Positions 1 through 52,673 of a stretch of DNA of 64,000 nt are shown in pieces. The position numbers and the translations under genes were made by a program. The first letter of the stretch is position 1, and each line of letters begins with the position of its first letter. The DNA lies in contig CM052820.1 of the NCBI GenBank assembly GCA_028534125.1, positions 17,670,001 to 17,734,000 of the forward strand. The letters are read 5' to 3'. This DNA comes from Lama glama. Its lineage: Eukaryota. The notes beneath the pieces are model-generated. The model searched no databases, was not told where the DNA came from, and saw nothing but the letters and a program-made list of their open reading frames with translations.

Positions 1-167
1 CCACACTGAGCTGGGAAGCAGCATGTGAAGTGGAGGCTTGGGCTTCTGTTTTCTCGTGCTTGTTCAGAATTCACCCTTGGGTCCCTTAATCTCCTGCAGG
101 GACCGCACTGCGGGGCTGTCATTTCTTTGTGACTACTTTACATGAAGGTTCAATTTCTTTACCTTAG

Positions 168-331
168 GTTTTCAAAGGGAAGCAGATTCTTTGTTGTCGG
201 TGACGAAACTCAGCACCATCAGTGATTCTAAAAACACAAGGAAGGCTCGGGAGATGTTGTTGAGACTGGCCGAAGAGACCAATATTTTCCCAACCAGCTG
301 GGAGCTCTCAGAGAGATACCTCTTTGTTGTG
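168..331 (+). CDS. Penultimate coding exon of an unrecognised plus-strand gene or isoform (MFSD6 side of the locus by synteny): (G)FQREADSLLSVTKLSTISDSKNTRKAREMLLRLAEETNIFPTSWELSERYLFVV
   Basis: Acceptor tttctttaccttag at 154-167, perfect donor GTG|gtaagt at 332, open frame of 2 nt plus 54 codons. Joins in phase 0 to the exon at 871. Confidence 0.8.
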
Positions 332-477
332 GTAAGTGAATACCTTTGTCCGTCTGCCCTGATTTTGCCTTAAATTTTTGCTTTCCTGTTGGTCCATATA
401 CTCATCATTCTGACACCACTAGCTCTGCCACAGTGTGAGGTGTGGCAGGTGAGGCTGGCATCTTCTGCATTAGTTCC

Positions 478-630
478 CAGTGGCCGGCACATCGTAATCC
501 CTTGGAGGGCTTTAAAAATTCAGGTTTTTGTATTGCACTCAGACCAGCTGAGACTTGGGTTGTGGCTCAAGAGTCTATCTGTATTTTTCAGCCAATTTTG
601 CTGTGTAGCCAGCCTTCTGAACCACTTTTT
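478..630. mobile_element. MER5-like hAT-Charlie MITE remnant
   Basis: Degenerate similarity to the recalled MER5B pattern (..aatcccttggagggctttaaaaat..cagaccagctgagac..). Confidence 0.45.
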
Positions 631-870
631 GTTCAAAGAGATGTAGGAAAGATTGTGTCTATAACCAAAGGTTGAAAAATGATTTGAAAAGACTCTTAGA
701 CAGCATAAGTGAGGGATTAAGGAGTGTCTCTAAATTTGTTAAGAAAAATGTAATAAATGTTTTACTTACTCATCATTTCTAGGGTGGATACTGAGGTTTT
801 AGATTGGTTTTCTCACTGACAGGGCTTGGTTTCTATCTTGAGAACATTTTTATCTTTAACTTTTTGGCAG

Positions 871-1005
871 GACCGTCTCATTGCACTCGATGCTGCGGAA
901 GAGTTCTTTAAAATTGCCAGTCGAACTTACCCCAAGAAGCCTGGGGTCCCATGCCTGGCAGATGGCGAGAAAGAATTGCACTGCCTTCCGTTTCCAAGTC
1001 CCTAA
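871..1005 (+). CDS. Terminal coding exon of the same gene or isoform: DRLIALDAAEEFFKIASRTYPKKPGVPCLADGEKELHCLPFPSP*
   Basis: Acceptor tttaactttttggcag ending at 870, 44 codons plus TAA at 1003-1005, in frame with exon 168-331. Candidate AATAAA at 1351-1356. Confidence 0.8.
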   Translation, partial: DRLIALDAAEEFFKIASRTYPKKPGVPCLADGEKELHCLPFPSP

Positions 1006-1024
1006 AGGAGAGGCTGCGAGGCAA

Positions 1025-1060
1025 CACTGGAATTCTTCCACTGGAATTCTTCCACTGGAA
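1025..1060. repeat. 14-bp tandem repeat (cactggaattcttc x2.6)
   Basis: Units at 1025-1038 and 1039-1052, plus a partial unit at 1053-1060. Confidence 0.95.
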
Positions 1061-3174
1061 CTCAACAGCCAACCAAAGTTGGACAAGTGCTAGAGGGCTA
1101 GCTAAGGGAAGAAGGATTCTGGCTCCTACAGAAATCTAAGGGTTTGAATGTCTGGTCATCATGAGGACGTGACTCTGTGAAATGTTCAGGTTACATTGAA
1201 ACACCCTAGGGACCTTGCATCAGCAAGTTGGTCAGCGGGATATTTCATCATGGGTGATTAGCTTCCAAGAACTCGTTGCCCCTGTTTTGGTTTTGGTTGT
1301 ACAATAAGCTCTAAACACTGGTCCTGCTGGGAGAATGGGAAATTCTAGTTAATAAAACAGTAAGATTAATAGAACTACCATTGAACCCATATATGGATTA
1401 CCAATGTTTAAGTAATTGTTACACAATACAGGCTAACACCAAAATAATACCAGGCATCACATGACCTTTCCTTGACTTGGAAGCACCTACAGAGCCTTGG
1501 AGGTGTTTGAGGCCTCATTCTGAGTATCTGTTATGATGACTCAGAAGTTTAGATGTACCCAGTAATAGAAACACCTAGGAGTGCTGCTCAGAAGTGAGTC
1601 CCAAATAGAATGATCCCAAGGAGTACTTCTGCAGCTACATGTAAAAAGCTCTGTCTTCAGTTGTGGCACAAGCATCTTAATGTCCCAACATTATTGAGAT
1701 CTGGTTACCTCATTTTTGCATATTGCCCAGCCCTGATCCACAAGCCCTTGATATTTTATCTGGGATGGCACCTGTTTGACCTCCACTTTCTTCTCTTCTG
1801 TTTAGTCTGTCCCCAACTTATCAGCCGAGAGTGGCACCTGTCCAGGGACCCCCAAGCAGACTTGCAGCTCTATAGGCAGTGTTGCACTGAAGGTCCTTGC
1901 TGGACTTTCTCCCTTTCTGAAGATGATTTTTCAAACTGGAGCAGTTCTGTCAACACAGCTTGTTTCTATGCACAGATTGAGCCGTCCAGCTTCCAAAGTG
2001 ACTTGCCACGTAGGCAAGGAGCTTGCCATGAAATCATGGTTCATTTTATTGAAAAGACTTTCAGAGCCTGTAGGATTTCTCCATAGATTGCTGAGAACAA
2101 TGGCAATATTTTTACTTTTACAGATTTTGCTCTTCTGACTTCAAGTTAAAAAGTAACTTGTATTTAGTCTGCACAGGGGATTGTGACTTGAAAATTTTCC
2201 TATCCTGACTGGCCCTTTTGGCAGTGAAGACAATGTTTAAGATGTTTGTTAGAGGAGATGCGTGTTCTCCATTTACGAATGCATTGCAGACCAATTTAAC
2301 TGACATGTTTCAGGTAAATTCTTCCTAGTTTAGTAAGTAAACTGAAAGTTTTATTTTTTAAAATAAAAAATATATTTTTATTTTGTTTTATGTAGTACTT
2401 AATCCCTCTCTCATGTTGTTGAAAATTAGCCTGAAGGTATTTTTCCTCACGTCTGTGGGCTCTTGCAAGATAAACATACAAACAGTGAAACAAACAATAA
2501 ATTAAACCAAAAAAAAAAAAACTTGGAAAATCATATTATTTTCATCTTTGTCCTTGGAATTTGTATTTTGTCTTTCTGCCTTCTTTTGATGTCAAAATAG
2601 ATGGGATTGTTTGCATCTATGGAGAATAAATTGTAACCATAGTCTTTATTTTTGGTAATGAATAAGTAAGGATAAACTTGTCTCTCTGATTATAAAAACA
2701 TGTGGAATTATCCAGGAAATCTTCCTTGCAAGGAATTAAAAGTTTTCTGTTTACTTTTCAGTTGAATGTGTGTTTTATTTCTGAGAATTAAGAAGGAACA
2801 GATATTCTTTCCATAATCCCTTTAAATTAAAGGGTTAAGAAGCTGAAAGACTGAAAGGGCTTAAGGCCCTCCCATCATTCTAAAGCCATTCGAGGGGCGG
2901 ATCTGTGCCCAAGTCCATTGAGTGGTACGTGAGAGAGGCTTAAGGAAGCCTGAAGTGACCACTTCAGAAGTCACAAGTTACTCGGCAAGACCAGGATACA
3001 AAGGTTCATGCATGTATGCGGGGCGATTTCAGGTGGTAGATGGAAATTTTTATGTTAATAAGTTACTCATTTTAATATGCAGCATGGGGAAAACCTGTAA
3101 TTAGCAGATCAAACTCCTGATTTCCTATTCCACGGATATTATTGCAGTGAACAATAAAGTATAAATGTTTTCTT

Positions 3175-5110: not shown

Positions 5111-5164
5111 TGAGTTGGGTTTTTGTCAGATTCAGGAACGTGTAAGATCAAATTCTCGCATCAA

Positions 5165-6093: not shown

Positions 6094-7675
6094 GTACCTG
6101 AGTCAACAATACAGTACCCCCAAGACTGCATTTGTAGCTGACACGTTCACAGTGCCCCTACACTAGTTTTAGTGTAACTAGGCCAGAGCATTTATCTATT
6201 GAAATACATATGATTTCATTATGAGCCATTAAGTAACAACTTTATCTTTGGTATTAGAGCATTATTTTTAAAATGTTATCTTAAGTAGGTGTTATTTGTA
6301 AATTCATTTAACATAAATGGTTAAATCATTTTAAAAGACCATCATACAAGTGACTTTTCTTTAGCTAAGACATTAGAGTCAGTAACTTTGGGAAGAGGAC
6401 CTCACTGACAGCCGTAGAAACTAGTTTATGTGACTACTCTCCAATGATCAGAGACGGATCATGGCACGAAACTTGGATTCTTTCCCATTGGATTAATGAA
6501 TTTATCCATTCCCTCAGATCATGTTCTAATACTAATATCAAAAGAAGTCTGTTTAAATTTGATTAAGTTGCATTGAAAGGAGTATACTCATAATTTCTAA
6601 ATCACTACCACGTATAGAGTGAACACGGCCAGCTGCTTTGAATTTTCTTTTACAATAAGTGTTACTATTAGCTTCCAGAGTATTAGTCCACACTCTTGTT
6701 TTGACAAACTACAAATGGATATATGGCATTCTAAATTTTAACTCAACATATGGATTTAGAACACTGGGCTGCAGAGAACTGAGTTAGGGAACTAAGTCTT
6801 AACCTGATTCTCATCCTTTGATCATTTAGTAACTAAATGGGATTTACCTGATTTTGCTATTCATCCATATTCTAAGTATTTAGTGAGACTAAATTTAGAA
6901 AGAATAATTTTTTGCATATATGTGTATGTATGTGTATTTCTATATTACATATTATAAAGAACAAAAATAAAATCATGAGATTCATAATAGTTAAATAAAG
7001 CACCGGCCTATAGATCATTACTTTTTCAAAAGCCAACAGCTGTAGTTTTTAGGTAACAATTTACTTAAAAAATTCTTCAGCATTAGTAGCATGAAAGGTG
7101 TAAGCTAATTTTATCATATGTCCTAGAGAAGTGTAGTTAGCATTCGAAGTATCCTAATCAGGAATCCACTTTCCAAGATGATTAAACAACAATCTTTATC
7201 AAAATTTACACCGGTAAGTTCATTAAGTTGCATAAAGGGGGGTAGGAATGAGTTTCCATTAGCGAAATGAGTGGTAGTCAAGATAAATGCTTGGCTAGAA
7301 CAACTGGCCGCCATCAACTTTGCAAGAAGGTGTTAAGAATCTCTTATACCCAGCAGTGTTGAAGGATTAGAGCATCCTTTGTCCTTTGTCTACCTTCTTC
7401 ACAGACCTGAGGCCAAGTTGTCTGATTTGGTTATCAGAATATTGTTGTGTCTACATAAGAATAACACTTTCAATCAAGTTTCTTTCAAACTTTTATTTCA
7501 ATAGTAGGTCCCGAGAAACGAAAGTGGAGGCTTCTCTGGGATTACAGGAAGCAAATGAGTAATTCCTGGTTAATAAGTGTTGTATGAAGAATTTGGGATA
7601 AGATTTGCTTCCATTGTAACATTAGGTTGCAAGAGGATGAGGGAGGCTATACATGGCTTTCCCTTTCCATTCTTG

Positions 7676-7945
7676 AGGCCAGCCTCAAGCAGTGGGATCT
7701 AATCGCTTGGAGAGGTATCCCATAGGCTGTTGGGTAGGACCCAGCCATTGGGTGAGGACCTCCAGGGCTATTCCTCCTCTCTCGTGAACATAGAACTGGA
7801 AGGGCCTTGTGGGACCTGTAAGCCCGAAGGCCGGGGATCTTACTAGGAGATTTTCTCATTCTTCCATTGCTTCCTGTTGGGAAGGATCCCACTGGAGACG
7901 TCTTCCCAATCATCTACCCCTAAAGCCCCTTCTGGGAAGCTGGTC
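7676..7945 (-). pseudogene. Inverted ERV1 pol fragment (RT thumb/connection, RT_RNaseH_2 region)
   Basis: Minus-strand 7897-7676 translates to LQWDPSQQEAMEE*ENLLVRSPAFGLTGPTRPFQFYVHERGGIALEVLTQWLGPTQQPMGYLSKRLDPTA*GWP, matching the gammaretroviral motif KPFxLYVxExxGxAxGVLTQ..YLSKxLD..GWP, with two stops. Confidence 0.85.
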
Positions 7946-7948
7946 CCC

Positions 7949-8810
7949 ATGGATCTGGCGTTTAAAGTATTGAACAACAGAGAGAGGGCTAAAGAGGCAA
8001 AAAGGATTCAGGGACAACAGCAAAAGGTGCAATCCTTAGCAGCAGCCTTTATCTCTGCACCACCTCAGAGCTACCCTCCACCAAGACCCATGGTGAGGAC
8101 AGGATCCAGGATGCCTGCATCAGAGCCACTGTCTTGCCAAAAAGGGACCTGTTTTAAGTACAGCCAGGAGGGCCACTGGAAAAACAAATGCCCCAATTTT
8201 GGGAAAAGTCCACCAGGACCCTGCCCTATGTGCAAACAGAAAGGCCACTGGGAGCGGGACTGCCCCCAGTCCCGAAGTGGGCTTGGGGCTCCCAAACCAA
8301 TGATGGCTGAGATGACTAAAGGCTGCGGGGGCCTGGGACCCTCCCTGGCTCCCACAGGACACTGGGTCATTTCTCCGGCAGAGCCTTGGCGACTCCTTGT
8401 GGCAGGTAGAAAAGTTGTCTTCTTATTAGACAAGGGAGCCACCTACGTGTGCTGACTGATTTCCTTGGACCCTTGTCCTCCCAATCCAGTGTACTAACGG
8501 GGGTCAACAGAAGGCCCCCAACAAGGTGCTTACTAAAAATTTACTTTTACACATGAGTTTTGGCTAGTGGCTGAGTGCCCCATCCCCTCACTGGGAAGGG
8601 ACCTACTTGCTCAGTAAATCCCAATAATTAAAATAATCCAATTCAAAGACCCTTACGTGAAAGACATGCACCCCAAAAAATGTCTACTCTTGGCTTTGGG
8701 AGCCTGCCTCAATCCCAAGCCAGAAGAGGTCTCCCTTCCACTCCATATTGATTCTCAAGTCAACCCTGCTGTCTGGGAACCTGAGGTCCCTGGCAGAGCT
8801 ACTATTGTCA
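7949..8810 (+). pseudogene. ERV1 gag (CA end, NC) - protease - start of RT remnant
   Basis: ORF 7877-8455 contains MDLAFKVLNNR, a degenerate knuckle CFKYSQEGHWKNKC, an intact CCHC CPMCKQKGHWERDC, and protease FLLDKGAT (catalytic DTG changed to DKG). Further PLLGRDLL-type and VNPAVWEPEVPGRA RT-start tracts follow after frameshifts. Confidence 0.92.
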
Positions 8811-10870
8811 GGTTATCATCAAAATGGGACCACGTGAGGCCACAGGCAGGCCTCTTCAGATCAGAGGCCAAACCAAGAGCTTTAATTAAAAAAAACTTCT
8901 CAAACCCAGGAAGGCTCCTCAAAAGTGTTCATAAATAGATGGCCAAACGGGAGGCCATTGGTTGGACTAAACTGACCATAGCTGATATTTGGAGCCTAAT
9001 AAAATTTTTTTAGAAAAGTCTCCCCTAAGCTAAATGAGAAAAAACAAAACTGTCTTTGTTTTACAAATCTAGTCTTTACAGGACCAGAGGTGTGTCTCCA
9101 GAAAGGATACAAAGCCCACCAATCCTTTGACCACTCCCAAAACCTCCCCTACGTATTTATCTTAATAGACAAGTATTAAAAAAAGACACTTTTTTCTGGC
9201 CTTTGAAAAACAAAATCTCTCTATGAGACTCTAGGGCTTCCTATGCCTTTGAGATACAAATATTCTACCTTGTCTTCTCTGGGAATTCTGATCTCACCAT
9301 CTTTCTAAAATGCAAATTTTAAAAAAAAAAGGTGGGGAAAGAAGTAATTTGGAACTTAATTTGCTAAGGAGAAGTAAAAATTTTATCTCTTTTTCATAAA
9401 TATTAGCAAAAAGCCTTAGCCATGTAAGTGGGCAACTTTGATTTGTTCTATCTGCCAAAAACCCCAGTTTAAATCCAACTTCTTTGGTAGCCAATGGGCT
9501 TTACTTTGTTCTATCTGATTTATGACTAAAATTTTAAAATGAAAACTATAAGGTGTTGTATGCCACAGATGTATGGTATTGGCACAATTAAATGGTAAAA
9601 GAGCTCTTTAATTGGCTGAAAGGAAATTAAGTACTTCTATAAATACTCAAAACATAGAGAAAACTGGCCAAAATAAATTTCAGGTTCACGTTATCTAAAA
9701 AGGATTCAGTACTGGTACTGGTATTGAAGCTAGCTTAAGCTTGCTAGTTTAATTAATTCAAACATGTCTTTAGAGGCATAAGTGTTAAGTATAATAGTTC
9801 GGCTGTGCCCAGGCTTAGTAGAGGGCAAGCAAAACTTTATTATATCTGTTACAAAGCTGTCAACAAAAAAAGTAACTCAGTGTAAAAAAAACTTTCAAAA
9901 AGTAAACAAAACATGGGATTTGGGGTAAACTCTATAGGAGTTTTCTTTTGAAAGTATCCACCTAAAATTCTCTCTCCAAATTTTGGTACTTAAAAGTTAA
10001 AAAGTTCACTGACTATCTGTGTCATTTATAAAATATTAAAACATTAATTGCTGGGCAGGCAGATCTAAGTTTATCTACCTTTGCCTTAGAAAAAAAACAA
10101 AACAAAACATAAGTTTCTAGTCAGGAAATGGTGATATGACAACCAATTCACAGTTGCTTGCTTCTTGGTTTTTGCCAGAGATTTAAGGTTTTGGAGGGTT
10201 AAAATGATAATACATGTAATTACAGCTCCTAAAATAAGTATTTCAGTAAACAGTGGGAAAGTAAGATGTATGCTTTTAGTAAGTATTTGGTAAACAAACA
10301 AACAAACAAACAAACAAAAGCTAAAAAAAAAAGGTTTCATACATAATCAGAATTTTAAATATCTAACAAATTCTGAAAGTTCTTTGTGGCCCCAGCTAAC
10401 TTTAAGATGCTTTAAAAAAAAACCTGAGACATCTCACATATTAAATTAACTAGGATTATTTAATATGTAAAGTTAAATATAATCAGTCATAATTCTCATA
10501 ATTACAAACAAATCTATCAGTTACAGATGTTTAGCCATGCCTTTTAAGTCTTTTTGTTGTTACAGACTGTCGAGTTGTTACAAAGGTGCTTCATCTTTAA
10601 AAACATTCATCAGAAGTCAATGGAAACAGTGGATTTCAACAGTCCCAGTCAAATGATGGCTATTGGAAGATTCCAGCTCATACCCTCAGCCCTCTGGACA
10701 CAAAAACAAAAGGCTTCCCTGCTCTTGGGGCCCCTAGATTAGGCATTCAGAGATTTCTTACTCCCTGCTAGGGCCCTGCTCAAGCCTGGCCTGTTAGCAA
10801 CTTCAGAAGAAGGACCATCGCCCCTCTACAATTCCATAAGATTATGGGAGTAAAATCTCTGAGGGGGCGA
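8811..10870 (+). mobile_element. AT-rich non-coding ERV1 internal sequence (MER4/MER41-group non-autonomous type) ending in a polypurine tract
   Basis: Lies between the RT remnant and the LTR, ends with PPT gagggggcga at 10861-10870, and has no long ORF. Confidence 0.65.
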
Positions 10871-11331
10871 TGAGACAGGAAGGGGGCAGGGCACAGCCAT
10901 TCAGGGGATTACACGGCAATTAACGCTAGAATGGCTAAAAATTCAACCCCCAGGAGGACTTGAGGCTCAAAATGGTGGGAGATTTGACTTCTAGGAGACC
11001 GTGAGCTTCATTATACGCCCACTGTAACACATTAGCATGGTGAATAACATGCCCACAGGCACCCATGGCAGTCCCAAGGCTAGCCACAAAAGGTCAAAGA
11101 GCGGGAAAAGGCTAATTTCCTGGGAATCCCAGCCCCTTCTTCAGCCTAGACTGGTCCTTCGACTTATTAAGATATAAAGCTACCGAGCCCATAAAAATTG
11201 GCCTTTGGAGACGGCCTGCACTCTATTGGAATGTGTGCCCACTTTTATTCTAAACTGAGCTTCCAAACCCCACATCTTGTGGCCTTTCTCTTGCCTCCTG
11301 ATGTATCTCTAAATAAATCTACCTTGACTCA
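10871..11331 (+). mobile_element. MER41-like ERV1 3' LTR truncated at the polyA site (U3-R only), followed by an A-rich tail at 11332-11360
   Basis: Starts with TG after the PPT. TATA-like gatataaagc near 11171, cccataaaaattggcc and cttttattc blocks as in recalled MER41, AATAAA at 11312-11317, then CA at 11330-11331 followed directly by aacaaaaaaaaccccaaaaaacaaaaaaa. Confidence 0.8.
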
Positions 11332-11417
11332 AACAAAAAAAACCCCAAAAAACAAAAAAAGATGATTTGTCCCTCATATGAGCAGAAGACTAAGTTAGAC
11401 AAGCCTGGGGGTGGATA

Positions 11418-11578
11418 NNNNNNNNNNNNNNNNNNNNNNNNNNNNNNNNNNNNNNNNNNNNNNNNNNNNNNNNNNNNNNNNNNNNNNNNNNNNNNNNNNN
11501 NNNNNNNNNNNNNNNNNNNNNNNNNNNNNNNNNNNNNNNNNNNNNNNNNNNNNNNNNNNNNNNNNNNNNNNNNNNNNN
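11418..11578. other. Assembly gap (161 N) flanked on the right by (TA)n-like low-complexity sequence to about 11670
   Basis: N run followed by atatataatatacatgttatatatg.. Confidence 1.
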
Positions 11579-12470
11579 ATATATAATATACATGTTATAT
11601 ATGTACATATATTATATATGCATAAATATACAGATATATAATAAACATTACATATATACATATCCATACAGAGACTTGTGTATTTACATGCACCCATAAA
11701 ATAGGCACATGATACGGCTGTACATCCCTAGCTAGACCTGTGTATGGATGAGCACCCCTTTAATAGCCACATGATATGGATGCACTTCACCTCCACCCAC
11801 AGGCCTGTGTTTGGAGGGGTACCCGTTCTCACAGACACATGATAAGGGTGCACTTCATCTCCATCCCATCTTGTAAACACATGACATGGGGTGCGTCTCC
11901 ACCCTCAGGCCTGGGGATGGAGGGGCACCTCGTCTTGGCATTATTAAAGGTTCTGAGAAGGCCTGCAGTACATTCATTTACTCTTGTATCAATCTTAGTT
12001 GACCTTAGTATCCCTTTATCCACTAACACTGATTAGCTTCCTGTGGACTATTTTGGGAAAGACTGGTCCAGCATATCTCAGGTCTCTCCCAGCACTTACG
12101 CTGATAACACGTAGGAAGAGCAACGTAGTCTTTTGACACGGCTCTGGAGATCAAGGGAGCAAATTTTAATGTCCCGGAGTTGACAAGGCACCTGTTTATA
12201 TTAATTGGCCCCTTGAAGATCAATATGATTCCCTTGTTCCTATAAAAGCCTTCACTCAGGGAAAGTGGTAATGACCATCACAGAATCTTGGTGGCCACCT
12301 ACAGTACAATTAGAACTGGTCAAGAAGGGCCAGCTACCCTCAACATAGTTTAGTTTTCCTTTCCAGTGTAACGTGCTTTTCTCCACAGCAAATGCTTTTG
12401 CCACTGTTCCCTAGAACAGTTCTGCTGCCTTTAACAGGGTCGCTTCCCCACTTCCTTGTCCAGAATGAAG

Positions 12471-12612
12471 TCAGTGTGCAGGCAGGCTGTCAGGAGTCCT
12501 CGGGTTAAAGAGCTGCTCTTCCAGGAAGGCACCTCCGAAGCCATACTGTTCTTCATGCAGACTGATTTCTTCCGGTGACAAGTGGCTTCCTCCAAGAACA
12601 AAGTCTGCAAAC
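12471..12612 (-). CDS. NEMP2: NEMP2 last coding exon (exon 9 equivalent): (K)[46 protein letters not shown]
   Basis: Acceptor aaaaaacctag|G at 12613/12612 and stop TGA at 12473-12471. The peptide matches the conserved NEMP C-terminal region. Confidence 0.96.
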
Positions 12613-13324
12613 CTAGGTTTTTTTGTTTTAAATAGTTAACGTTATCACAGAAAGGTTTATTTTGAAGATAACATGTTCCCTTGATACTTATCCCCTTAAA
12701 TTAAACGTGACTTTGCATCAGTGGAGGATGGCATTTACACAGCGGGCGTGAAAACAGGAATGGCTTATGTATCCTCCTCGAGATGCTCAGGGAAAGGCAG
12801 ACTCAGAAGCATCGGTGCTGCCAAAAAGACCGCTCCTGTTTTCTAATCCCGTCTCTCTCCCTTTCTTAATAAACACATTATTTATTCATTATTTGGTGTC
12901 AACACTTCCCCTTCAGCCTCCAATCTGAGGGCACTGTCGTTGGGAGAAAGCTATGAAGAAGGGAAAGCGCTAAGGAAAAGATGTCGGGGCGGAGATGTCT
13001 TTCTCGGTCAACTTTACAAATGACTGTCCGCACCCTCAGAATGAGAAACAAGTGACACATCCCATTCCACCTCTTCCCTTCTCCTATGAGCTGTCTGGAT
13101 GGCCTGCCCTATAAAACACATCGGGTCAACACCGATTCTGACACCGGTAGGTTGTACAGTGCAAGTCGGAGCACGGAGGGAAAAGAACATCCGACAGCTT
13201 CCACATCGTCTGTCATGCAGGGAAGTCGGCTGTTTCTAGCCTGAGGCATCTGAACCAAAGCGCTGCATTATTTTCACAATAAATCCAACCCAAGCTGTAG
13301 TCTGGGCAGCTGAGTGGGGCTTAC

Positions 13325-13501
13325 TTTTTGGGCGCCTGGAGCCTGGAGACGGCCAGCCAGGACGGAAAGCCGGGGCTGCGGCAGGCCTGGCGCAGCTCCT
13401 CCAGGGCGCGGGTGGTCGCAGCATCCGCTTGTTCCCTGTATTCGTCTTCAGTGAGGTACTTAACCACCGGCTTTTTCGATGTAAACCATGTCTTCACTTT
13501 C
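13325..13501 (-). CDS. NEMP2: NEMP2 exon 8: (R)KVKTWFTSKKPVVKYLTEDEYREQADAATTRALEELRQACRSPGFPSWLAVSRLQAPK
   Basis: 177 nt, tag|G acceptor and AA|gtaag donor. LTEDEYREQA..ALEELR is the NEMP nucleoplasmic motif. Confidence 0.97.
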
Positions 13502-13949
13502 CTAAAACACGCAGCATTTAATTGCTAGATTCCATATTTGGTTACTCAATTCAATCCTTAAGATTTATAAAAGTATATTTCTTAGTGACAGTAATAACTC
13601 TTAACTTCCTCTACATCATACTATGCTGCATTATTGCTATCATGACTGGGGTTTATAGAACTTGCTGTTTGGGCCTAATAATACCTTTCTCCTCCTCCTG
13701 GACCATCCTAAATAATGTTCTAAGGCATCTGAGGATCAATTTCTGATAAAGATATTAATTGTATTTTTCTTCCTCGGTGATTTCAAATCACACAAACAGA
13801 CAATTAAAGGTCTGGCTTCTTTATGCTTGCCTGGATTTCCTTGGGCACTAATAGAAGCAAGCCTTTGAGATGTCCTTTTACGGAGACCCAGAAGCATCAT
13901 TTGCCACTTAGTCTCAACACAGAAGACAGAAACATTTGTGGGACAGTGC

Positions 13950-13962
13950 CTCCACCTAGTGG
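13950..13962 (-). promoter_or_regulatory. Candidate CTCF core motif (CCACTAGGTGGAG) in NEMP2 intron 7
   Basis: 11/13 match to the CTCF core CCACTAGGTGGCA. Motif match only. Confidence 0.3.
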
Positions 13963-14031
13963 TGGTGATTCTCACTAATCCTAGAGAGGGAGCCAACACT
14001 GGACAAAAAGTTGTGTATTAAAAACAATTCT

Positions 14032-14187
14032 CGTTGGGAGGGTACAGCTAAGTGGTAGAATGTCTGCTTAGCATGCACAAGGTCCTGGGTTCAATCCCCA
14101 GTACCTCCATCAGATAAATCAAACAAACTTAATTACCTCCCCCACCAAAAAATAAATAAATAAAATTTTAAAAAAGAAAAAAACCCC
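14032..14187 (+). mobile_element. Camelid tRNA-derived SINE (Vic-1-type) with A-rich tail and 9-bp TSD
   Basis: A box tacagctaagtggtagaat, B box ggttcaatccc, (taaa)n/A tail. TSD aacaattct at 14023-14031 and 14188-14196. Confidence 0.9.
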
Positions 14188-14574
14188 AACAATTCTTTGC
14201 TACATGGTGAGGGGCTCATGACTGGAATTTTTTTCCAACCAGGAAAGTCCTAAAGGAGAGAATCTCATAAAAATGGTAATGGTGATAAAATTTTTAACAT
14301 ATATGTTATATTTATCAATGAGCTTTTAAAAATGTTTTTGAGTGGCTTAAAATTTAATTTAACCAAAGATTCTCAAATATAAATAAATGAGCATCAGAAT
14401 TACCAAAAGGTGTTTTAACATATTATTTCCTTGAGGTTTGGGACCTGAAAAATCTTTCAATTTTTAGTAACTCTGTGATGGTTGATGAGCTGGATTAGGG
14501 GCCCACTGACATTATTTCCTTCTCCTTTTCCGAAAACCTAGCCTGGGCCCCCCAGAGGAAAACCCCTGGGCTCT

Positions 14575-14790
14575 GAGCAGAAGACTGGGACACAGTCTGG
14601 CTCTGAGGTTTACCCACTGTGTGAACTGGGGCAATTCCTTCACAGTTCTGAGCCTCACTCTGCACACAGGGGAAAAAAATGAAAGTAATAATATCCATCT
14701 CAGGAGGTCACTGTACAGATGAAATATCATGTTTTGTGTAAAGTGCTCAGCACAGTGAGTGGCCTATAGTAAGTATGCAGTAAAGCTAAT
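14575..14790 (+). mobile_element. MIR SINE
   Basis: Core-like tgtgaactggggcaattccttcacagttctgagcctca and tail gtaaagtgctcagcacagtgagtggcctatagtaag. Confidence 0.75.
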
Positions 14791-15289
14791 CACAAGAGTA
14801 GCTACCAAATATTATTAAAATACAAACAGCTCTTTGCAAACTAGAACGTACTATAGAAATCAAAGTATTATTTCTCTGGTTTATTATTTAACCTGTAAGT
14901 TCCTCTTTTATCCCTCAATTCTTCACATAATTATTCACTAGCAAAATGAAAAGTTGAAGTTACAATAATATTTTGATTATTCATGTTAACAATACATAGT
15001 AAGCGCATAAGGGGATCGTCATGCAGGTGACAGAACACACTCTGCTCCTGGCAGGGCAGTGATGTTTGAAGAGAAAGTGGAAGGCATTCTCTCTTGGGTT
15101 CCTTAGGGCACAAACCTGGCAAAGGACCAGAGGCCTGGAGGATGTGGAGTGGCCAGCCTCCTCCTGGCAGAGGGACCTCTTGACACAGGGCAGAGAGAAG
15201 CAGTCAGCATCAGTGCCTCTGACCCTGCTGCCTTTCAGCCTTGCCACCAGCCTCTGCGTAGGAGCCCTGGTCTCATGCTGGTGCATGTT

Positions 15290-16120
15290 TACCCCTGTGA
15301 CATCACCACATATGCAGCCACCAATTACCAGTCACCGAAGTCTCCTTCTTCACAGCCAAGTCTACCACGTAAATACTTATTAACTCCTTCTTCTGGCCTT
15401 GAATCTCACTCCTCCAGGCCCCCATCACCTCCTGCCTGGACCACTGTGATGTCTGATGCCTGGCCTCCTGCCCCAGAACCTCCCCTTACATCTTCCCTCT
15501 GTGCCAGAAGACAGATGGGCCCCATCCCACTGCCCGAAGAGTGTTCATGGTCTCTGCTTTGATTTTTGCTTGTTGGATGTATTTTTATCTTCAGATTAGT
15601 TGCCAACATTAAAAAATCATAAAAATTTACATTCTAACCCATATTCTTAGCTTTTTTAGAAAACCAGAAGGTGTGCAAGGCTGGCCCATATTCCCACATG
15701 GCAACAATCGGCTCAAGTTGAACGGTAACTGACCCCCTTTCGACAGGGCTACATCGTACAACTTCCCACATCCTCACGCTCGCCCCACCACCTCACCTCT
15801 GCTCAGAATCACTCACTCAGTACATGTGAGGGCCCTGAGCATTTGAATTTGTAACCACTGTGCAGGCAGCAGTCAGAGAGCACTGACTAATGTGCATTAA
15901 CTGTCAGCTGCCTCCACTGTGCCTAGGATCAGGTCAGATTCCTCAGCACAGCCTGCAATACCTCCACGACCTGGCCGACGCCCCCTTGCTCACCTGCCTC
16001 CTGATGGTACCAGGCTGGGCTCTCTCCCTGTCAGGAAAGCCCCTCCTATATTTATTCATCTGGCTGTTTTGATTCATTAAGATTTAGCCCAGTATTATCT
16101 CCTCCAGGAACTTTCCTGAA
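15290..16120 (+). mobile_element. L2 LINE fragments
   Basis: L2-like tracts (catcacctcctgcctggaccactg; ..tctcctccaggaactttcctga). Confidence 0.5.
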
Positions 16121-16795
16121 CTTTTTCAATGTCACAGTTCCTGGGTGGGCCTACTGAAAACTTCAAGGCTATAGAAGTGTACACCTACGTCCAAGGACCC
16201 CTCACAGGTGGGGACCACCTCTGTCATCTGCGCACCTGACACAAACGCAGGTGCTGAGACTCCGTGACTGAGGACGTGATGAAGCCGTGAGAAGAAAAGT
16301 TCCCTCATCTTTTTTTCTGTACTTTTAAAAGACTGAAACCTTTTCTTAAAACCTAAGAGAAAGAAAGTCCTCAACATAAATAATACCTTTTAACCATTTG
16401 TAATCGATTTCTGTTCCCTAACTCTTATCTCAGAAGCACAACAAATACCTCTAAAGCAGTTGTGGGCTCCAAAGAAAGAAAATGTAGAAAGAAAGCAGAA
16501 GTTTTAGGCAACCGAGAGCCCAAGTGATTTTGCCACTGATTTTTGTGAATTCTAGGTGAGCTGTAATTACCCAGCAATTGGTGGTGCACCTCTGGGAGAT
16601 TAATGAAGACGAGCACTGGAGGTGGGGTCAGATGCTTAAATTCTCTACCCTCCTCCTCTCTGAGGGAGCATTCCAGATGAAATGGAGTCAACTCTGAGAT
16701 TAAATGTGACACGTCCAAAAGATTCCCCCAAAGAATGAATAAAACCAGAGCCCAAAATGTCACATTTACGAGGGGTAAAAAAAGATATGCAGTAC

Positions 16796-17018
16796 CTCAT
16801 GTAGCCGAACGCTTTCAGTGGGTAGCGCAGGTTCCCGGACGACAGGAGAAGGACCATGACCGTACAGGCGAAGCGAGGTGCGGTGACACCAGCATAGACC
16901 AGGAGCAGGGCCAGGAGCCGCAGAGTCCACATCAGGAGATTTCTGCTCCTCTTCTCAACCAAGGGCCCGTGCTTGTAACAAACAGTAAAGCTGAGACACC
17001 CAACTATCAAGATATAGC
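16796..17018 (-). CDS. NEMP2: NEMP2 exon 7: (G)YILIVGCLSFTVCYKHGPLVEKRSRNLLMWTLRLLALLLVYAGVTAPRFACTVMVLLLSSGNLRYPLKAFGYM(R)
   Basis: 223 nt, cttgcag|GC acceptor and AG|gtact donor. Transmembrane segments and the CYKHGPL motif of NEMP. Confidence 0.97.
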
Positions 17019-17529
17019 CTGCAAGAGAAGAATGTAAAAGAATATAAATCTGAACTTGAGAAGTTATGTGAAAAACCTGGCAGAGCCTTGACTTAGAGCT
17101 AAGAACATATCAGAAAACCTTCCTTTTTGCTTTCTCTTTCCAATGAAGCAAAGTTGAAAAAATGCATTTAGGGCTAGTTATTCCTTCCATGTGAGATGCT
17201 AGGCTGACTTTTGTAATAATTAAGGATGTATAATAATAAATTAATATAATACATTATGTATAAATATACCTGTTTTCTAGCCCCGAGTCCTACAGGGCAA
17301 ATATTATCACGGTAGCTCTGGTCAGGAAGAAGCCTCGGTGTATGTCACAGTCTGCTATAAAACCTATTTTTAATTTTTACTTTCTACTCACAAAAGGAAA
17401 ATCTAATTTTACAATGAGGGATCAGGCTGTCACTCTTGTAATCCACTGCTCAGTCACAGCATTACTAACAGAGGGACAATGAGATATTCTGTGGCGCCTC
17501 ATGTTGTGATCCAAGGTGAAGTGCAAATC

Positions 17530-18060
17530 GCCTCTTACACATTCCATCAAAAGTGTTTCATTTGTATCTAATGCTAGCCTCAAGATCTAATTTCCAGCTT
17601 ATAGGAAATGGGGTGGGGGGGAGGGGAGGAAACAAGTTTCATCATATCACAAAGGTGTAATCAGAAAAATCCGGAAAGTAGAACATTGTATAGGACAACT
17701 ACCTTGGTCTCTGTGATGGGGGAAAAAAAAAAAAGAACTGTTACAGATTAAAAGATTTATAGGACACAACAGGCATAAAATGTGATTCTGGACTATATGC
17801 TACCTTGTACAAACCAACAATTAAGGATGTTTAGGAAATTTAATGGCCTGGATAAGACACGATTTTATGTAATTATTAATTTTTTAAGATTTAATAGTTA
17901 TTTAACTATAGAGGAAATGCTTTTGCTTTTTAGAGATGCTTAGTGAAGTACTGAGGGAAACATACCATGAGATCAATAATTTACTTGGAAAATACCTTGG
18001 CATAAAAAGAATAATGGACTAAAAGCATAAAACCTTCAAGTGAAAAAAAAATCGATTGCT
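17530..18060 (+). mobile_element. Old L1ME-type 3' UTR fragment
   Basis: Degenerate L1ME 3' end text (..gaactgttacagattaaaagatttataggacac..). Confidence 0.55.
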
Positions 18061-18645
18061 TTTGAGTGGGTGGATTTATGTGAAAGATTTGGCACTAAAA
18101 GGTTAGGACAAAACTGATTCCCCCATTGTCCATTATTCCACAATTAAAACAAACACTTTCAAAAAGTTTTTTTTTAACAACATGAAACAAGAACAACAAG
18201 TGGTTTCTTAACAGCCTCTCTGTTTCTGAAAAGTCAAGTTTTCATTAGTCATTTATATTTAGGATTTCCACCTTTCATACTAAATACACTAAGAAAAAGA
18301 AGAGCCACATTTTAGAGAAATTTTTTCATTATAATTTCGGTGTGGTTAGAGCTTAACCACAATTTCAAAGCATATATAGTCAAAAGGGCAAATAGCAAAT
18401 TTTTTTGCCCTTTTGATCATTAGTATAGAAAACTAAGAAGTATGTCATGGAGAAATAGTCTAACACGAGATCTAATGAACTGAAATCACCAACCACGGAA
18501 ATAAGATAAAATACTATTTTTAGCACTTTTTTCCTTAGTTCAAAATGAAAATTTGGATGGAGAGAAACGTATGTCGAAAGAAGGCCTCTAGCTGTACTTT
18601 TCAGCTGTATTGACAGTAAACTGTATTTTTTTAAACTTTACCTAC

Positions 18646-18760
18646 CTAATATATATATTCTGTTTTCATACCACAGCCACTTCAGATCTTCCATCAGTTG
18701 ACACAAAACATAAACTGAAGCAAACCAACAACCAACCATTAGAGCCCAAAAGGTGCTATA
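18646..18760 (-). CDS. NEMP2: NEMP2 exon 6: YSTFWALMVGCWFASVYVLCQLMEDLKWLWYENRIYIL(G)
   Basis: 115 nt, cacacag|TAT acceptor and G|gtagg donor. Confidence 0.97.
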
Positions 18761-18905
18761 CTGTGTGTGGAAGAAAATAAATGACACAGTTTTTGGTTCA
18801 TTCACTCTCATAAACATAGAAGTAAACAAATAAACCCTCTGAATCAGAAACTTCTGTATGAAACTGCACTGAAGTCAATTCAAGACACTCGTCTAGGTCT
18901 GATTA

Positions 18906-19055
18906 AAGGCGTGGTCCACACACCAGCAGCTTCGATGCCACCTGCGAGCTGGCTGGAATGCAGATTCTCAGGCCCACTGCAGACTCCTGACTCAGAACCT
19001 GCGTTTCAACAGGACCCCCAGGTGACTTGCATATACATTAGTTGGAGAAGCACTG
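18906..19055. mobile_element. MER5A hAT-Charlie MITE
   Basis: gaatgcagattctcaggcccactgcagactcctgactcagaacctgcgtttcaacagg..gagaagcactg. Confidence 0.8.
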
Positions 19056-19574
19056 ATCTAAAGAACAAATTTATCTCAAAATAATGCTGGTGTTGCAAGC
19101 TTTCATCAGAGTAACTACAATGTTCATATCATGAATTAACATGTATTTATCTTTGACTACATGCAGGGCAGTCTTATATTGAAGGTGTTTTGGGGAACTG
19201 ATGATAATGAAGAAATCCCCGGATGTAGCAACGCCATTATTCAAGGCCCCAGTGGTTCAGCAGCATGACATTCCTCAGCTAATGCCATGATGAGAGAATT
19301 GTTTACTCAGTATAGAATTAGCTGCCATTGCTCATAAGAAAAATGCATTACCTAGAAAATAAGAGGTTCTCAAAAAAGTATCACCAAAACTTAATACTTA
19401 AGCCTACACATAGTAACAAATGAAAATTAAAATCTTTAGAAAAAGATACATTTTACAGCAAGTTTATAAAATGTAGAAACTGGAACTGTCATACATGAAT
19501 TTAGTCTGATCAGTTTTTCATGGTTATGAGATCATGATTTCCATTTTTTATTCATTTGTACCTAGTATACCTAC

Positions 19575-19668
19575 CTTAGGAATGAATCTTTTCACCAGTA
19601 GCAGGACAAAGACTAATGTCATTAGAATACCTAGCACAGTCCCCGAAGAGTAATAGAAAATAGGGCTT
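19575..19668 (-). CDS. NEMP2: NEMP2 exon 5: (Q)SPIFYYSSGTVLGILMTLVFVLLLVKRFIPK
   Basis: 94 nt, cttgacag|A acceptor and AAG|gtagg donor. Confidence 0.97.
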
Positions 19669-19909
19669 CTGTCAAGACAAGCAGATAAAAGAAATTTAAA
19701 TGCCAAGTTGCACTCTCAGTATGAAAAACATGTTTAACGTGGTGACAGTAGCCATAAAGAATACTAAGAAGAAAAACTCAGATGGCAACTTTAATTATAT
19801 CCTATACTCTTAAAAAAAAAAAAGAAATCTCTACTTTAAATTTATAGTAAATAGCTTGCCACTAATTCAAAACAGTGTCTGAGTTATCTTCTATGCTTAG
19901 AATCTGATC

Positions 19910-20110
19910 CAATAATACTTACTGGAGCACCTACCACTTGTCTGAGAGCTTTACATGCACTCAAACAGCCCTGTGAATCAGTTATCCACGTCTACATTTT
20001 ACACGGGAGGAAACTAAGGCACCAAGAAGTTAAAGACCTTCTCCAAGTCAGTATCTGCTGCCTGGAGGATTCAGGCTTGCAGCCTAGCTCCTCTAAGTCC
20101 AAGCTTTACT
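19910..20110 (-). mobile_element. MIR SINE
   Basis: cattttacacgggaggaaactaaggcaccaagaagttaaagacc core. Confidence 0.7.
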
Positions 20111-20768
20111 CTTCACACTATGTAGACAACAACCAATTTATTAAGACCATGGAGGATATTAAACACCCTTGATTACACTACAAGAAAAAGCTCAAAAACG
20201 AACAATGTCCAGAATAGCAAGCTAAGATGTAAAATATTACTGGAAAGAAATTCCTTTTTCATGAGAGAAGTTGTAAGACACACAGTATCAGGATAACATG
20301 TGTATCCAGAGTCGGACAGTGGTTAAAGTCAACTTTCTGTATCAGAGCCACAAACCGAGGAGGCAGCTCAAATGTAAGAGAGGAAGGCATCTGGTATCAG
20401 AAAACCTGAGTATAAACTTCAGCCCTGGCCAGAACTAGTCATGTGATGACGGATTGGTTTTCTCACCTATGAAATGAGAACAGTCACACAGAGCTCACAT
20501 AATCATTAAGAGAATCAATTCAAATAATATAACACATATTAATAAATAATACAAAATAATGCATGTGAAAGCACCCTGAACCATTACAGATTATACTATA
20601 CAAACAACAGTTACTGGGTTTAAAACCTTTCAAACACTATCTTCAGACTTACTGTTTGGAAAACCTAAAGCAAGAACTACAAACTAATGTGGAAATATTG
20701 AGCAGAGGGTCAAAAATGTCCTACTGTTTTCGATTCACAAAAATAAGAAAGTAAAAATGAATACTTAC

Positions 20769-20841
20769 TGACTCAAGGTCTTCGCATAAAAGAAGAGGAA
20801 CATGCCTGCCACAAACACAAGGAAGAGTTTGAAATCCACAA
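20769..20841 (-). CDS. NEMP2: NEMP2 exon 4: (I)VDFKLFLVFVAGMFLFFYAKTLS(Q)
   Basis: 73 nt, cactccag|TT acceptor and CA|gtaag donor. Confidence 0.97.
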
Positions 20842-20965
20842 CTGGAGTGAAAAAGACACGGGCACATAAGAAAGATTTTGTGTCAATGTAGCATTAATGA
20901 AAGAAAAGTCGATTTACTGAAATGTCACTGCAGAAAAACTGAATCCAGAAAATCAATGGACTTAC

Positions 20966-21197
20966 TGTTTCGAGTCACGCTCATTGTATAGGTAAATATC
21001 TTCCTGGCAGGAGTCACAGAGAAGCACACGGTCTCCCCATATGGATTGATGACTATGGTTATATCATTAGACTCTTTTGGTGTCCAAAACTTATGAATCA
21101 TACATTTGATAATAGACAGAATGGTTTCTGGATACTGGCAATTATGTCTTTCTGTGATATAGACAATACTGAGCAGGCCTGAACTAGTAATTTTCAC
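20966..21197 (-). CDS. NEMP2: NEMP2 exon 3: VKITSSGLLSIVYITERHNCQYPETILSIIKCMIHKFWTPKESNDITIVINPYGETVCFSVTPARKIFTYTMSVTRN
   Basis: 232 nt, ttttgtag|GTG acceptor and A|gtaag donor. Coincides with ORF 20925-21197. Confidence 0.96.
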
Positions 21198-21899
21198 CTA
21201 CAAAACAAGAACAAATTCACAAACACGCAACTCAAAACTTCTTACAAGCTTCTTAAAATCATGAGCAGAGGAGTAAAGAGAGCCTAAGGCTGGTGGAGTA
21301 AAGAACACGCAGATGTACATGGGAAAGTTCTGATCCCGGGGATGGACCTAGAGGTCTGTATTTAGTCAACACACACTAGAACATGGACCCTTTTGAAAGT
21401 GGGTATTTCTTCCCCTGAGTTGTGGCTGATTGAACTCCTTCTAGCAGGTTATTGTGGCCAAAGGACATGTAAAAAAGGATGGCACAGAAAATAACAGGTG
21501 GCAAACTATTTGGTTACAGACATAATGAGAATAGGGTTTACTACCTCTATCATTTCTACTGTGATTGAGAAAAAGCACTTCTATCCATCCTATGGATCAG
21601 CTGAGCATAAATGATTCAGGCTTCTTTCACCATGCCTCCTGAAGGACCGGAACCCAAGCTCAAGGTCCTACCCAAGCCTCACAGCAAAGGATCAGCCACA
21701 ATGCCAAGCAGATGGCGACAGCCCAGAGATCATTAAAGGACAGCTCCGTGGCTGCTTTTGTCTCTATTTCTTTTCTTTGTCCAAGGTTAGGGCAAGCCTG
21801 AAAAGGGGAGTGAGAGCGCCAGCCCTGAGCCTCAGGCATCAGGCGACACCACTATCTGCCCACTGTGCCTCATTTCTCTTGGACATCAGCCCCTGGCTC

Positions 21900-22960
21900 A
21901 GTGTGGCTCTCTCTCCAATACTACTTCCTGCCCTACGTCTCTGGGACTAAATAGACACAATATACATACCAAACTCCTTCCAATACGCTGTCCTCTTGGT
22001 TCCTTGAACTCCCTTCTTATGCTCCTGTCCGCCACCCCATCTCAGCTAATCACTCTCACAGCCACACCCTGATTCTTGTTAGTCCCAAACTCCGGCCCCA
22101 GATACTAGCTGCATTTCATGGACCCCACTGATTGAGCACCACCTCTTATCAGTGTGCCCCCTCTTGGCACCCCAATCCCAGCAAGCATTGACCCTACCAT
22201 GGATCAGGCATCTTGCCCCTGCTCCTTACCCTTGACGTCCTCAGCCACTTGTCTTCCAGCCAAGTGCCCTGATCAGCCATTGTAGCCATCCCCCTATATA
22301 TACCCTTAACTGGTCTGTGCCCTTCTTGCTTTATCACATGTAGTTACAAGATCCAACCCTCCACCTATTCCACTTTTGCATCTGCCCCACCAGCTGTGCT
22401 GGAGAAACTCACGGTGGTCTCACTTCAAACCCATGGCTGTGCACCTCAAGTGGGACCTGAGAGCTGCTGGCAATCACACCATCGCTCCCATCCAGTCACT
22501 CTCCCACTCCCTTCGACAATGACCTCACAGCTTCTTCTTCCCCGCAACCCCAACAGCTCCTGCCCTCCTCACGCCTGGTCGATGATCTCTCCTACTTCAC
22601 TGAGAATGGAAGAATTAGAAGAGAAAGTTGACCAGCTCCTATGCCCCCCTCCACCCTCCTGTCAGGATCTGCGGGCACATGCTGTTCCAGCCTGCAGGGA
22701 AGAAATTCCTGCCACATGCTCCGTTCTGAAGGCAAGCCCCCAGCCTGTGCACTGGATCTGATCCACCTTCGCTACTCAAGGACATTAAACCGGTACTTCT
22801 TCCCGCTCTAGCAGACCAACCTACCAGCATACAAACATGCTGGGGTTTTCCCATTTAAAGCAAAAAGCAAAAAAAAAAAAAAAAAAAAAAAAAGAACTTC
22901 TATAGACCCCAATTTCCCCTCCAGCTACCAACCCGTTTCCTTGCTTCTCGTTGCATTAAA
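21900..22960 (+). mobile_element. L2 LINE ORF2 remnant, interrupted by a poly(A) run at about 22860-22893
   Basis: C-rich L2 body text (ctcctacttcactgagaa.., cagcctgtgcactggatc.., accagcatacaaacatgctg). Confidence 0.7.
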
Positions 22961-22974
22961 ATTATTTTTAGGAT

Positions 22975-23490
22975 AGTCCTAGGAATGTATTGTTTGCCAG
23001 CAGGTAAAGAAGTGCTCCTACAATGACAGACACCCGTTAAAGGATACAGGAGCTAGTCTGAAGGGGCTCCGACTGGCCACATCTAGGACAATTTGAATAA
23101 CAAAATAAGTAGTAATGAATTGTAGTCCAGTGAATGAACTGGCAATCCATGAGACCATGTGGCTATAAATAAACTGGGGAGGTAAAACTCTTCCTTACAG
23201 AAAATGCCAATGAATACAGAAGGAATAATGGAACTAGAAAATCAGCGCTTGATCAACATCGTGCTGTTAACCAATTCAGGCAAGCGTTATCAATGGATAC
23301 AACTAGGGGGTAGAAGTTTGATGAGGAACAGAATATATATCACATTATCCCCTCAAAATATTCATTCATTATAGAGGCTGGAACAGCCATTTTATAGTGG
23401 CAGAACTGTCAATTGACAGATACCACCTCAACCAGTGATCAAAATGGTGTGTATTATCCGTAACAGTACAAATCAACACCATGAGCCCTC
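22975..23490 (+). mobile_element. L1MC/L1MD-type 3' UTR fragment
   Basis: gctagtctgaaggggctccgactggccacatctaggacaatttgaat.. is typical of L1MC/D. Confidence 0.7.
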
Positions 23491-23499
23491 TGATAATTA

Positions 23500-23868
23500 T
23501 GCTGTCCCAGCTCTTCCCTCAGCCGAGAACACTCTCCCCAGACACCCTGCTGGGTAACTCACTTCACTGAAATCTTACTCAAATGGCACCTTTTCAATGA
23601 GAACTGCCCTGACCACTCTCTTTAACACCGCAGCTTGCCCTTACTCCCCTCATTCACCTGTCTTACTTCACATTCTCCTTTTTCATAGCACTCACTAGTT
23701 TTATAATTTCCTTCTCTTTTACATTTATGGCTTAACTCTAGCCCTCATTCCCAAGAGTACAAACATCACAGGAGCAGGGATTTGCTTTGTTCCCTGATGT
23801 ATCCTAAGAGCCTAGAAGAGTTCCTGGCCCTTAGTAGGTGTTCAATAAATATTTGTTAAATGTTGAAT
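23500..23868 (+). mobile_element. L2a 3' end
   Basis: Terminal ..tagtaggtgttcaataaatatttgttaaatgttgaatgaa. Confidence 0.85.
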
Positions 23869-52573: not shown

Positions 52574-52673
52574 NNNNNNNNNNNNNNNNNNNNNNNNNNN
52601 NNNNNNNNNNNNNNNNNNNNNNNNNNNNNNNNNNNNNNNNNNNNNNNNNNNNNNNNNNNNNNNNNNNNNNNNN
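52574..52673. other. Assembly gap (100 N)
   Basis: N run. Confidence 1.

What the first reader, a model, noticed from the sequence alone, without database searches (positions are those of the whole stretch)
168..1005. Two spliced plus-strand coding exons encoding an unrecognised 98-aa C-terminal module, tail-to-tail with NEMP2
Seen in sequence: strong AG/GT sites define a 164-nt exon and a 135-nt terminal exon that join in frame to give GFQREADSLLSVTKLSTISDSKNTRKAREMLLRLAEETNIFPTSWELSERYLFVVDRLIALDAAEEFFKIASRTYPKKPGVPCLADGEKELHCLPFPSP*. The provided ORF track misses this joined frame. The peptide is protein-like and predicted helical, with no repeat origin evident. Established knowledge: in mammals MFSD6 lies on this side of NEMP2 in convergent orientation, but as I recall its canonical C-terminus is a low-complexity tail ending ..AAGGH, unlike this peptide. 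Inference: this is either an alternative C-terminal module spliced onto the MFSD6 transporter or the end of a separate small, poorly annotated gene. The exon is entered in phase 1, so a specific upstream partner exon is required outside the window.
Basis: partly seen in the sequence, partly recalled or inferred. Interest (0 to 1): 0.72.

Follow-up and report, generated by a model that had tools for sequence, protein, structure and literature searches.

The report
Last two exons of melanoregulin (MREG)
The two exons are real, but they are the ordinary last two coding exons of the well-known gene melanoregulin (MREG), not a new module or an MFSD6 isoform; the only unusual point is that here MREG, not MFSD6, lies tail-to-tail with NEMP2.

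Summary
Exons 168-331 and 871-1005 (+) have canonical splice sites, join in frame and end at TAA. The "unrecognised" reading does not hold. Both exons hit Pfam PF15812 (Melanoregulin) collinearly across the junction. They also match the solved melanoregulin chain 6CMY_A at residues 85-138 and 139-182, the end of the chain, at about 88% identity. So these are the penultimate and terminal coding exons of MREG (dilute suppressor), a characterised protein of about 214 aa. It is palmitoylated, sits on melanosomes and lysosomes, and recruits dynein through RILP. Exons 1-3 lie upstream of the window.

MFSD6 is indeed the convergent neighbour of NEMP2 in a primate and in banteng. In this camelid-like genome, homology to that arrangement stops about 0.5 kb past the NEMP2 stop, at about 11.94-11.99 kb, and MREG follows. 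This points to a lineage-specific rearrangement.

The finding is already known and of low interest.

The parts
1..167 (+). 3' end of the MREG intron that precedes the penultimate coding exon; ends in acceptor AG at 166-167
   Evidence: the exon is entered in phase 1, so the partner exon lies upstream of the window
168..331 (+). MREG penultimate coding exon, 164 nt, phase 1 in and phase 0 out
   Evidence: Pfam PF15812 MREG 68.1 bits (cut-off 27), profile 74-127/149; PDB 6CMY_A residues 85-138, E 5.7e-26, 49 of 54 identical
332..870 (+). MREG last intron, 539 nt, GTAAGT...CAG
   Evidence: RNA runs hold only 0.10-0.15 of its sampled words, against 0.28-0.35 for 100-1400 as a whole
871..1005 (+). 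Coding part of the MREG terminal exon, 44 codons plus TAA at 1003-1005
   Evidence: Pfam PF15812 profile 128-149/149; PDB 6CMY_A residues 139-182, the end of the chain, E 4.8e-22, 37 of 44 identical
1006..1375 (+). Probable MREG 3' UTR up to the first AATAAA (1351-1356); the true 3' end was not determined
   Evidence: positions of poly(A) signals; inference only, no reads could be laid
7184..11360 (.).
   Evidence: note s1-270876; ORF 7877-8452(+) gives weak Gag zinc-knuckle hits below the Pfam cut-offs; also present in dromedary (collinear alignment)
11418..11578 (.). Run of 161 N; two dromedary assemblies run across this place without a gap (about 165 nt there; letters not read)
11938..11988 (.). 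Point where homology to the NEMP2-downstream DNA of primate and banteng ends; the inferred synteny breakpoint
12471..24377 (-). NEMP2 coding exons 2 to last: 24377-24249, 21197-20949, 20842-20768, 19700-19575, 18772-18644, 17018-16796, 13503-13324, 12614-12474, then the stop. Exon 1 is not mapped and probably lies in or beyond the 500-N gap at 25391-25890
   Evidence: Pfam PF10225 NEMP 2e-20; splice sites of exon 17018-16796; tblastn of NEMP2 orthologues; source names 'nuclear envelope integral membrane protein 2'

Best explanation
Window 168-331 and 871-1005 (+) are the penultimate and terminal coding exons of melanoregulin (MREG, the mouse dilute suppressor dsu gene). They encode about residues 117-214 of a protein of about 214 aa. 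The window begins inside the preceding intron, so exons 1-3, including the Cys-rich palmitoylated N-terminus, lie upstream. From the literature, MREG is a small, highly charged, palmitoylated protein on melanosomes and late endosomes/lysosomes. It recruits the dynein-dynactin motor through RILP and p150Glued for retrograde, microtubule-based transport, and it also works with LC3 in phagosome and lysosome maturation. The piece encoded here makes up the C-terminal helices of the solved fold. It carries a sequence that fits the cholesterol-recognition (CRAC) pattern, L-x3-Y-x5-R, straddling the exon junction. Whether this is the CRAC motif tested by mutation in the structure paper is my inference. 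The gene lies tail-to-tail with NEMP2, with about 11.5 kb between the two stop codons. In this camelid-like genome MREG has taken the place that MFSD6 holds in other mammals, most likely through a lineage-specific rearrangement.
For: Shown: canonical splice sites, an open frame and the stop. Pfam PF15812 Melanoregulin is the only family hit for either exon, at 68.1 bits (cut-off 27) and 24.2 bits, with consecutive profile positions 74-127 and 128-149/149. PDB 6CMY_A 'Melanoregulin' matches at residues 85-138 and 139-182 of 182, with E 5.7e-26 and 4.8e-22; 86 of 98 residues are identical and the match runs to the last residue of the chain. RNA-seq runs from several studies hold 0.25-0.35 of the sampled words of 100-1400 but only 0.06-0.15 of the intron words, while DNA runs hold 0.89-1.00 of both. 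From papers: MREG is a vertebrate-specific protein of 214 aa with a Cys-rich N-terminus (PMC3439427); it forms the Mreg-RILP-p150Glued machinery and is palmitoylated (PMC9586991); its structure is solved and its CRAC motif is needed for retrograde transport (PMC7308992); it partners with LC3 (PMC12724551).
Against: Only the last two exons are in the window, so an intact full-length gene is not shown. The exon-versus-intron word shares are indirect and cannot be placed on the sequence. The neighbourhood, with NEMP2 rather than the FN1-side DNA I recall from human 2q35, is not the usual one for MREG, which leaves a small chance that this is a displaced partial copy.
Confidence: 0.96

Rival explanations
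1. The two exons are an alternative C-terminal module spliced onto the MFSD6 transporter.
For: MFSD6 is the convergent neighbour of NEMP2 in a primate and in banteng: proteins of 793 and 857 aa with PF12832 MFS_1_like lie 9-10 kb 3' of NEMP2.
Against: The peptide matches only melanoregulin, with no MFS family hit, and is collinear with the MREG chain to its last residue. The primate and bovine NEMP2-MFSD6 intergenic DNA and MFSD6 3' end are absent from window 1006-11938.
Confidence: 0.01
2. This is a displaced partial duplicate or pseudogene fragment of the MREG 3' end, carried next to NEMP2 by a rearrangement, while the functional MREG sits elsewhere.
For: The neighbourhood is unusual for MREG. 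Only two exons are visible. A retroviral remnant and a synteny break lie within 11 kb.
Against: The frame is intact over 98 codons. All four splice signals are canonical. The stop falls at the exact orthologous position. The differences from the solved chain are few and mostly conservative. RNA runs hold exon-rich word sets from this exact sequence.
Confidence: 0.03
3. The MREG-NEMP2 adjacency is an assembly artefact (a chimeric join) and not a real rearrangement. This concerns the context only, not the identity of the exons.
For: A run of 161 N lies between the two genes. No reads were laid. The dromedary loci fetched stop at window 2407/2447, about 1.4 kb short of the MREG stop.
Against: Window 1-11417 has no N. 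Two dromedary assemblies are collinear with window 25390 to 2407 at about 97% and have no gap at the N-run. The two gap-free stretches overlap by 9 kb.
Confidence: 0.1

Closest known systems
Melanoregulin (MREG, dsu; Pfam PF15812; PDB 6CMY)
   Same: The 98 residues align without a gap to residues 85-182 of the solved chain, 86 of 98 identical, and end at the same C-terminal residues. The Pfam profile is covered from position 74 to its end at 149. The exon boundary falls between consecutive residues.
   Different: There are twelve substitutions against the solved chain, as expected for an orthologue from another mammalian order. The genomic neighbour on the 3' side is NEMP2.
MFSD6 (major facilitator superfamily domain-containing 6)
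   Same: Only the expected position: in a primate and a bovid MFSD6 ends 9-10 kb from the 3' end of NEMP2, in convergent orientation.
   Different: There is no sequence similarity and no MFS Pfam hit. The MFSD6-side intergenic DNA is missing from the window.
NEMP2 (TMEM194B; Pfam PF10225), the neighbour
   Same: Eight coding exons on the minus strand match NEMP2 orthologues: 93-100% per exon to the alpaca protein and 83-98% to the dromedary protein, with lower values where the local alignment runs into intron.
   Different: It is not part of the finding itself. Its downstream DNA diverges from the ancestral arrangement about 0.5 kb after the stop codon.

Membership tests
Melanoregulin (Pfam PF15812 MREG) | Match to the family profile above the curated cut-off | tested here: met
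   Exon 168-331 scores 68.1 bits against a cut-off of 27, E 1.4e-18. Exon 871-1002 alone scores 24.2 bits, just under the cut-off for a 22-residue stretch, but continues the same profile at 128-149/149.
Melanoregulin (Pfam PF15812 MREG) | Collinearity with an experimentally characterised melanoregulin through to the C-terminus | tested here: met
   6CMY_A residues 85-138 and 139-182 of 182; E 5.7e-26 and 4.8e-22.
Melanoregulin (Pfam PF15812 MREG) | Cys-rich, palmitoylated N-terminus and the first three coding exons | not testable with these tools
   They lie upstream of the window; the window starts in the preceding intron.
Melanoregulin (Pfam PF15812 MREG) | Transcribed and spliced 331/871 | tested here: inconclusive
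MFSD6 (MFS_1_like, PF12832) | MFS transporter domain, or sequence continuity with an MFSD6 product | tested here: not met
   Neither exon gives an MFS hit, even at E up to 10. The MFSD6-side DNA seen 3' of NEMP2 in primate and banteng is absent.
NEMP family (PF10225), for the minus-strand neighbour | Profile match above the cut-off and a multi-exon gene with orthologues named NEMP2 | tested here: met
   74 bits against a cut-off of 28.7; exon map; names. NEMP1 proteins match the test exon at only about 50%.

The most novel reading that the evidence does not exclude
The exons themselves are not new. The most novel reading still open concerns their setting. In the camelid lineage a chromosomal rearrangement cut about 0.5 kb 3' of the NEMP2 stop codon (window about 11.94-11.99 kb) and joined it to the 3' side of MREG. 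This replaced MFSD6 as the convergent neighbour, and a retroviral remnant lies at the junction. It may have given NEMP2 a new 3' UTR or new convergent-transcription partners.
Probability: 0.75. Interest if true: 0.2.

Novelty: already known. Interest (0 to 1): 0.08.

Why it matters
It matters little for biology: this is a correct exon call for a gene that has a Pfam family, a solved structure and a twenty-year literature. It matters more for the scan. The case shows that a synteny expectation (MFSD6 next to NEMP2) can mislead a reader where the genome has been rearranged, and that one profile search settles such a case. The side observation, a lineage-specific synteny break between NEMP2 and MFSD6 now joined to MREG, is a routine comparative-genomics item. 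It could help anchor camelid-versus-ruminant breakpoint maps.

Tried and rejected
The later run search used 340-860 only. Local alignments from then on used a copy of the window with 200-249 masked. The local tblastn used the whole window file as the subject on the closed machine.

2. MFSD6 reading: rejected.

3. My own first assumption that the NEMP2 neighbour was a mistake, because I recall MREG at human 2q35 and NEMP2 at 2q32.2: rejected after the Pfam scan of ORFs.

4. NEMP retrocopy: rejected, because the exons are separated by introns with canonical sites.

5. Papers PMC534743 (dsu cloning) and PMC6170685 (structure) are not held. The exon numbering and the exact CRAC residues therefore rest on my memory or on inference.

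6. Look-ups of ferret and macaque NEMP2 isoforms found nothing on record.

7. A 600-nt match between window 63360-64000 and the banteng NEMP2-downstream DNA was tested as possible displaced orthologous DNA. It is unique within the window and absent from both dromedary loci, and a 110-nt part recurs in the opposite orientation upstream of primate NEMP2. I take it for an old dispersed repeat; this is unresolved.

8. I did not try to reach the dromedary MREG exons through the 68-aa spliced gene model in L001.

9. No tandem repeats scored 100 or more.

Full report
**Observation.**
- The acceptor AG is at 166-167. The first exon is 168-331 (164 nt). Its first two bases complete a split codon (phase 1), and 54 full codons follow.
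- The donor GTAAGT is at 332-337. A pyrimidine tract and the acceptor AG sit at 869-870.
- The second exon is 871-1005: 44 codons and TAA at 1003-1005.
- The join is in frame and the translations are as quoted. The first residue (G) is inferred, because its first base lies outside the window.

**Identity.**
- A Pfam scan of the two translations, with E allowed up to 10, returned one family for each: PF15812, Melanoregulin.
- The first exon scores 68.1 bits against a curated cut-off of 27 and covers profile positions 74-127 of 149. The second covers 128-149, the end of the profile.
- A search of solved structures gave the same answer. PDB 6CMY chain A, named Melanoregulin, matches the first exon at residues 85-138 (E 5.7e-26, 49 of 54 identical). 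It matches the second at residues 139-182, the last residue of the chain (E 4.8e-22, 37 of 44 identical).
- The proposed junction 331/871 therefore falls between consecutive residues of a known protein, and the stop codon sits at its C-terminus.
- These are the penultimate and terminal coding exons of MREG.

**What MREG does (from papers, not tested here).**
[quoted passage not shown] It is a vertebrate-specific, highly charged protein of 214 aa with a Cys-rich N-terminus (PMC3439427).
- It is anchored on mature melanosomes by palmitoylation. It recruits the dynein-dynactin complex through RILP and p150Glued for retrograde transport (PMC9586991).
- It also partners with LC3 (PMC12724551).
- The window's peptide contains a stretch fitting the CRAC pattern L-x3-Y-x5-R that straddles the exon junction. 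That this is the motif tested by mutation is my inference, because the structure paper is not held.

**Expression.**
- RNA-seq runs from several studies hold 0.25-0.35 of the sampled words of window 100-1400, where DNA runs hold 0.91-0.95.
- For the intron alone (340-860) the RNA runs that hold any of it (some seen, one new) hold 0.06-0.15, and DNA runs hold 0.89-1.00.
- This fits a spliced mRNA with some pre-mRNA, but it is indirect.
From then on nothing from those places was sent to any search tool.

**Surroundings.**
- I expected the NEMP2 neighbour to be a mistake, because from memory human MREG is at 2q35 and NEMP2 at 2q32.2. It is not a mistake.
- A Pfam scan of 34 of the 36 ORFs of 90 aa or more found one hit to PF10225, the NEMP family, at 2e-20. 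The ORF is minus-strand 16648-17010. It contains an exon at 17018-16796 with canonical splice signals.
- A search of 1.84 billion representative proteins with that exon returned NEMP proteins. The best are named nuclear envelope integral membrane protein 2 in dromedary (99% identical in that exon), macaque, ferret and horse. NEMP1 proteins reach only about 50%.
- Local tblastn maps eight NEMP2 coding exons on the minus strand from 24377 to 12474.
- MREG and NEMP2 are therefore convergent, with about 11.5 kb between their stop codons.

- In a primate (douc langur, L002), the gene 9 kb 3' of NEMP2 on the opposite strand encodes a 793-aa protein with PF12832 MFS_1_like, that is, MFSD6. In banteng (L005) the corresponding gene, 9.8 kb 3' of NEMP2, encodes 857 aa.
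- The 10 kb downstream of NEMP2 in these two species align with each other over about 6.1 kb in collinear order. They align with the window only for the first 480-550 nt past the NEMP2 stop (window 12470 down to 11938-11988) and with nothing in 1006-11938.
- NEMP2 introns align at 70-80% across the same species pairs, so the loss of homology is a break in synteny and not simple divergence.
- Two dromedary assemblies (L001, L004) are about 97% identical to the window and collinear from 25390 to 2407/2447. They have no gap where the window has 161 N at 11418-11578.
- The window itself has no N in 1-11417. The two gap-free stretches overlap by 9 kb, so the adjacency is probably real and shared by camelids.
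- The window's species is a close relative of Camelus, but I did not establish which one.
- The fetched dromedary loci end 1.4 kb short of the MREG stop. MREG next to NEMP2 is therefore shown directly only in the window's own assembly.
- A retroviral remnant lies right beside the break.

**Verdict.**
- The exon call is right, and the gene is MREG. The finding is already known.
- The only item with any novelty is the changed gene order. It is an ordinary lineage-specific rearrangement and was only partly characterised here.

Noticed in passing
window 11938-11988 (and 1006-12470 as a whole): There is a synteny break relative to primate and banteng. Homology to their NEMP2-downstream DNA ends about 0.5 kb after the NEMP2 stop, and MREG rather than MFSD6 follows. 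The arrangement is shared with two dromedary assemblies as far as they were fetched.
   Followed up: partly
window 25391-25890: This 500-N gap corresponds to about 10.9 kb in a dromedary assembly (L004 7118-18000). NEMP2 exon 1 was not mapped in the window and probably lies in this gap.
   Followed up: partly
window 12437-16272 (-), L001 10001-16269: The dromedary GenBank model KAB1278497.1 (P0001, 459 aa, named NEMP2) starts within NEMP2 exon 18772-18644. It strings together many pieces that fall in NEMP2 introns in the window (for example 16272-16135 and 15307-15032). None of these is supported by other NEMP2 orthologues, so it looks like an ab initio over-prediction.
   Followed up: partly
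window 63360-64000: A roughly 600-nt stretch flanking an N-run matches banteng DNA 3 kb downstream of NEMP2 (72-74%, same relative orientation as NEMP2). It lies on the wrong side of the gene. It is unique in the window and absent from the dromedary loci, and a 110-nt part recurs upstream of primate NEMP2 in the opposite orientation. It is probably an old dispersed repeat; this is unresolved.
   Followed up: partly
window 7877-8452 (+): A 192-aa ORF gives weak Gag-type zinc-knuckle hits (E 0.003-0.009, below the Pfam cut-offs). It lies inside the retroviral remnant that another note of this scan describes. The remnant is also present at the orthologous place in dromedary.
   Followed up: partly
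window 44159-44658, 52574-52673, 56034-56165, 63579-63711: Further N-runs of 500, 100, 132 and 133 nt. The long ORFs listed in several frames at 44.0-44.8 kb and 25.3-26.0 kb are artefacts of reading through N.
   Followed up: yes
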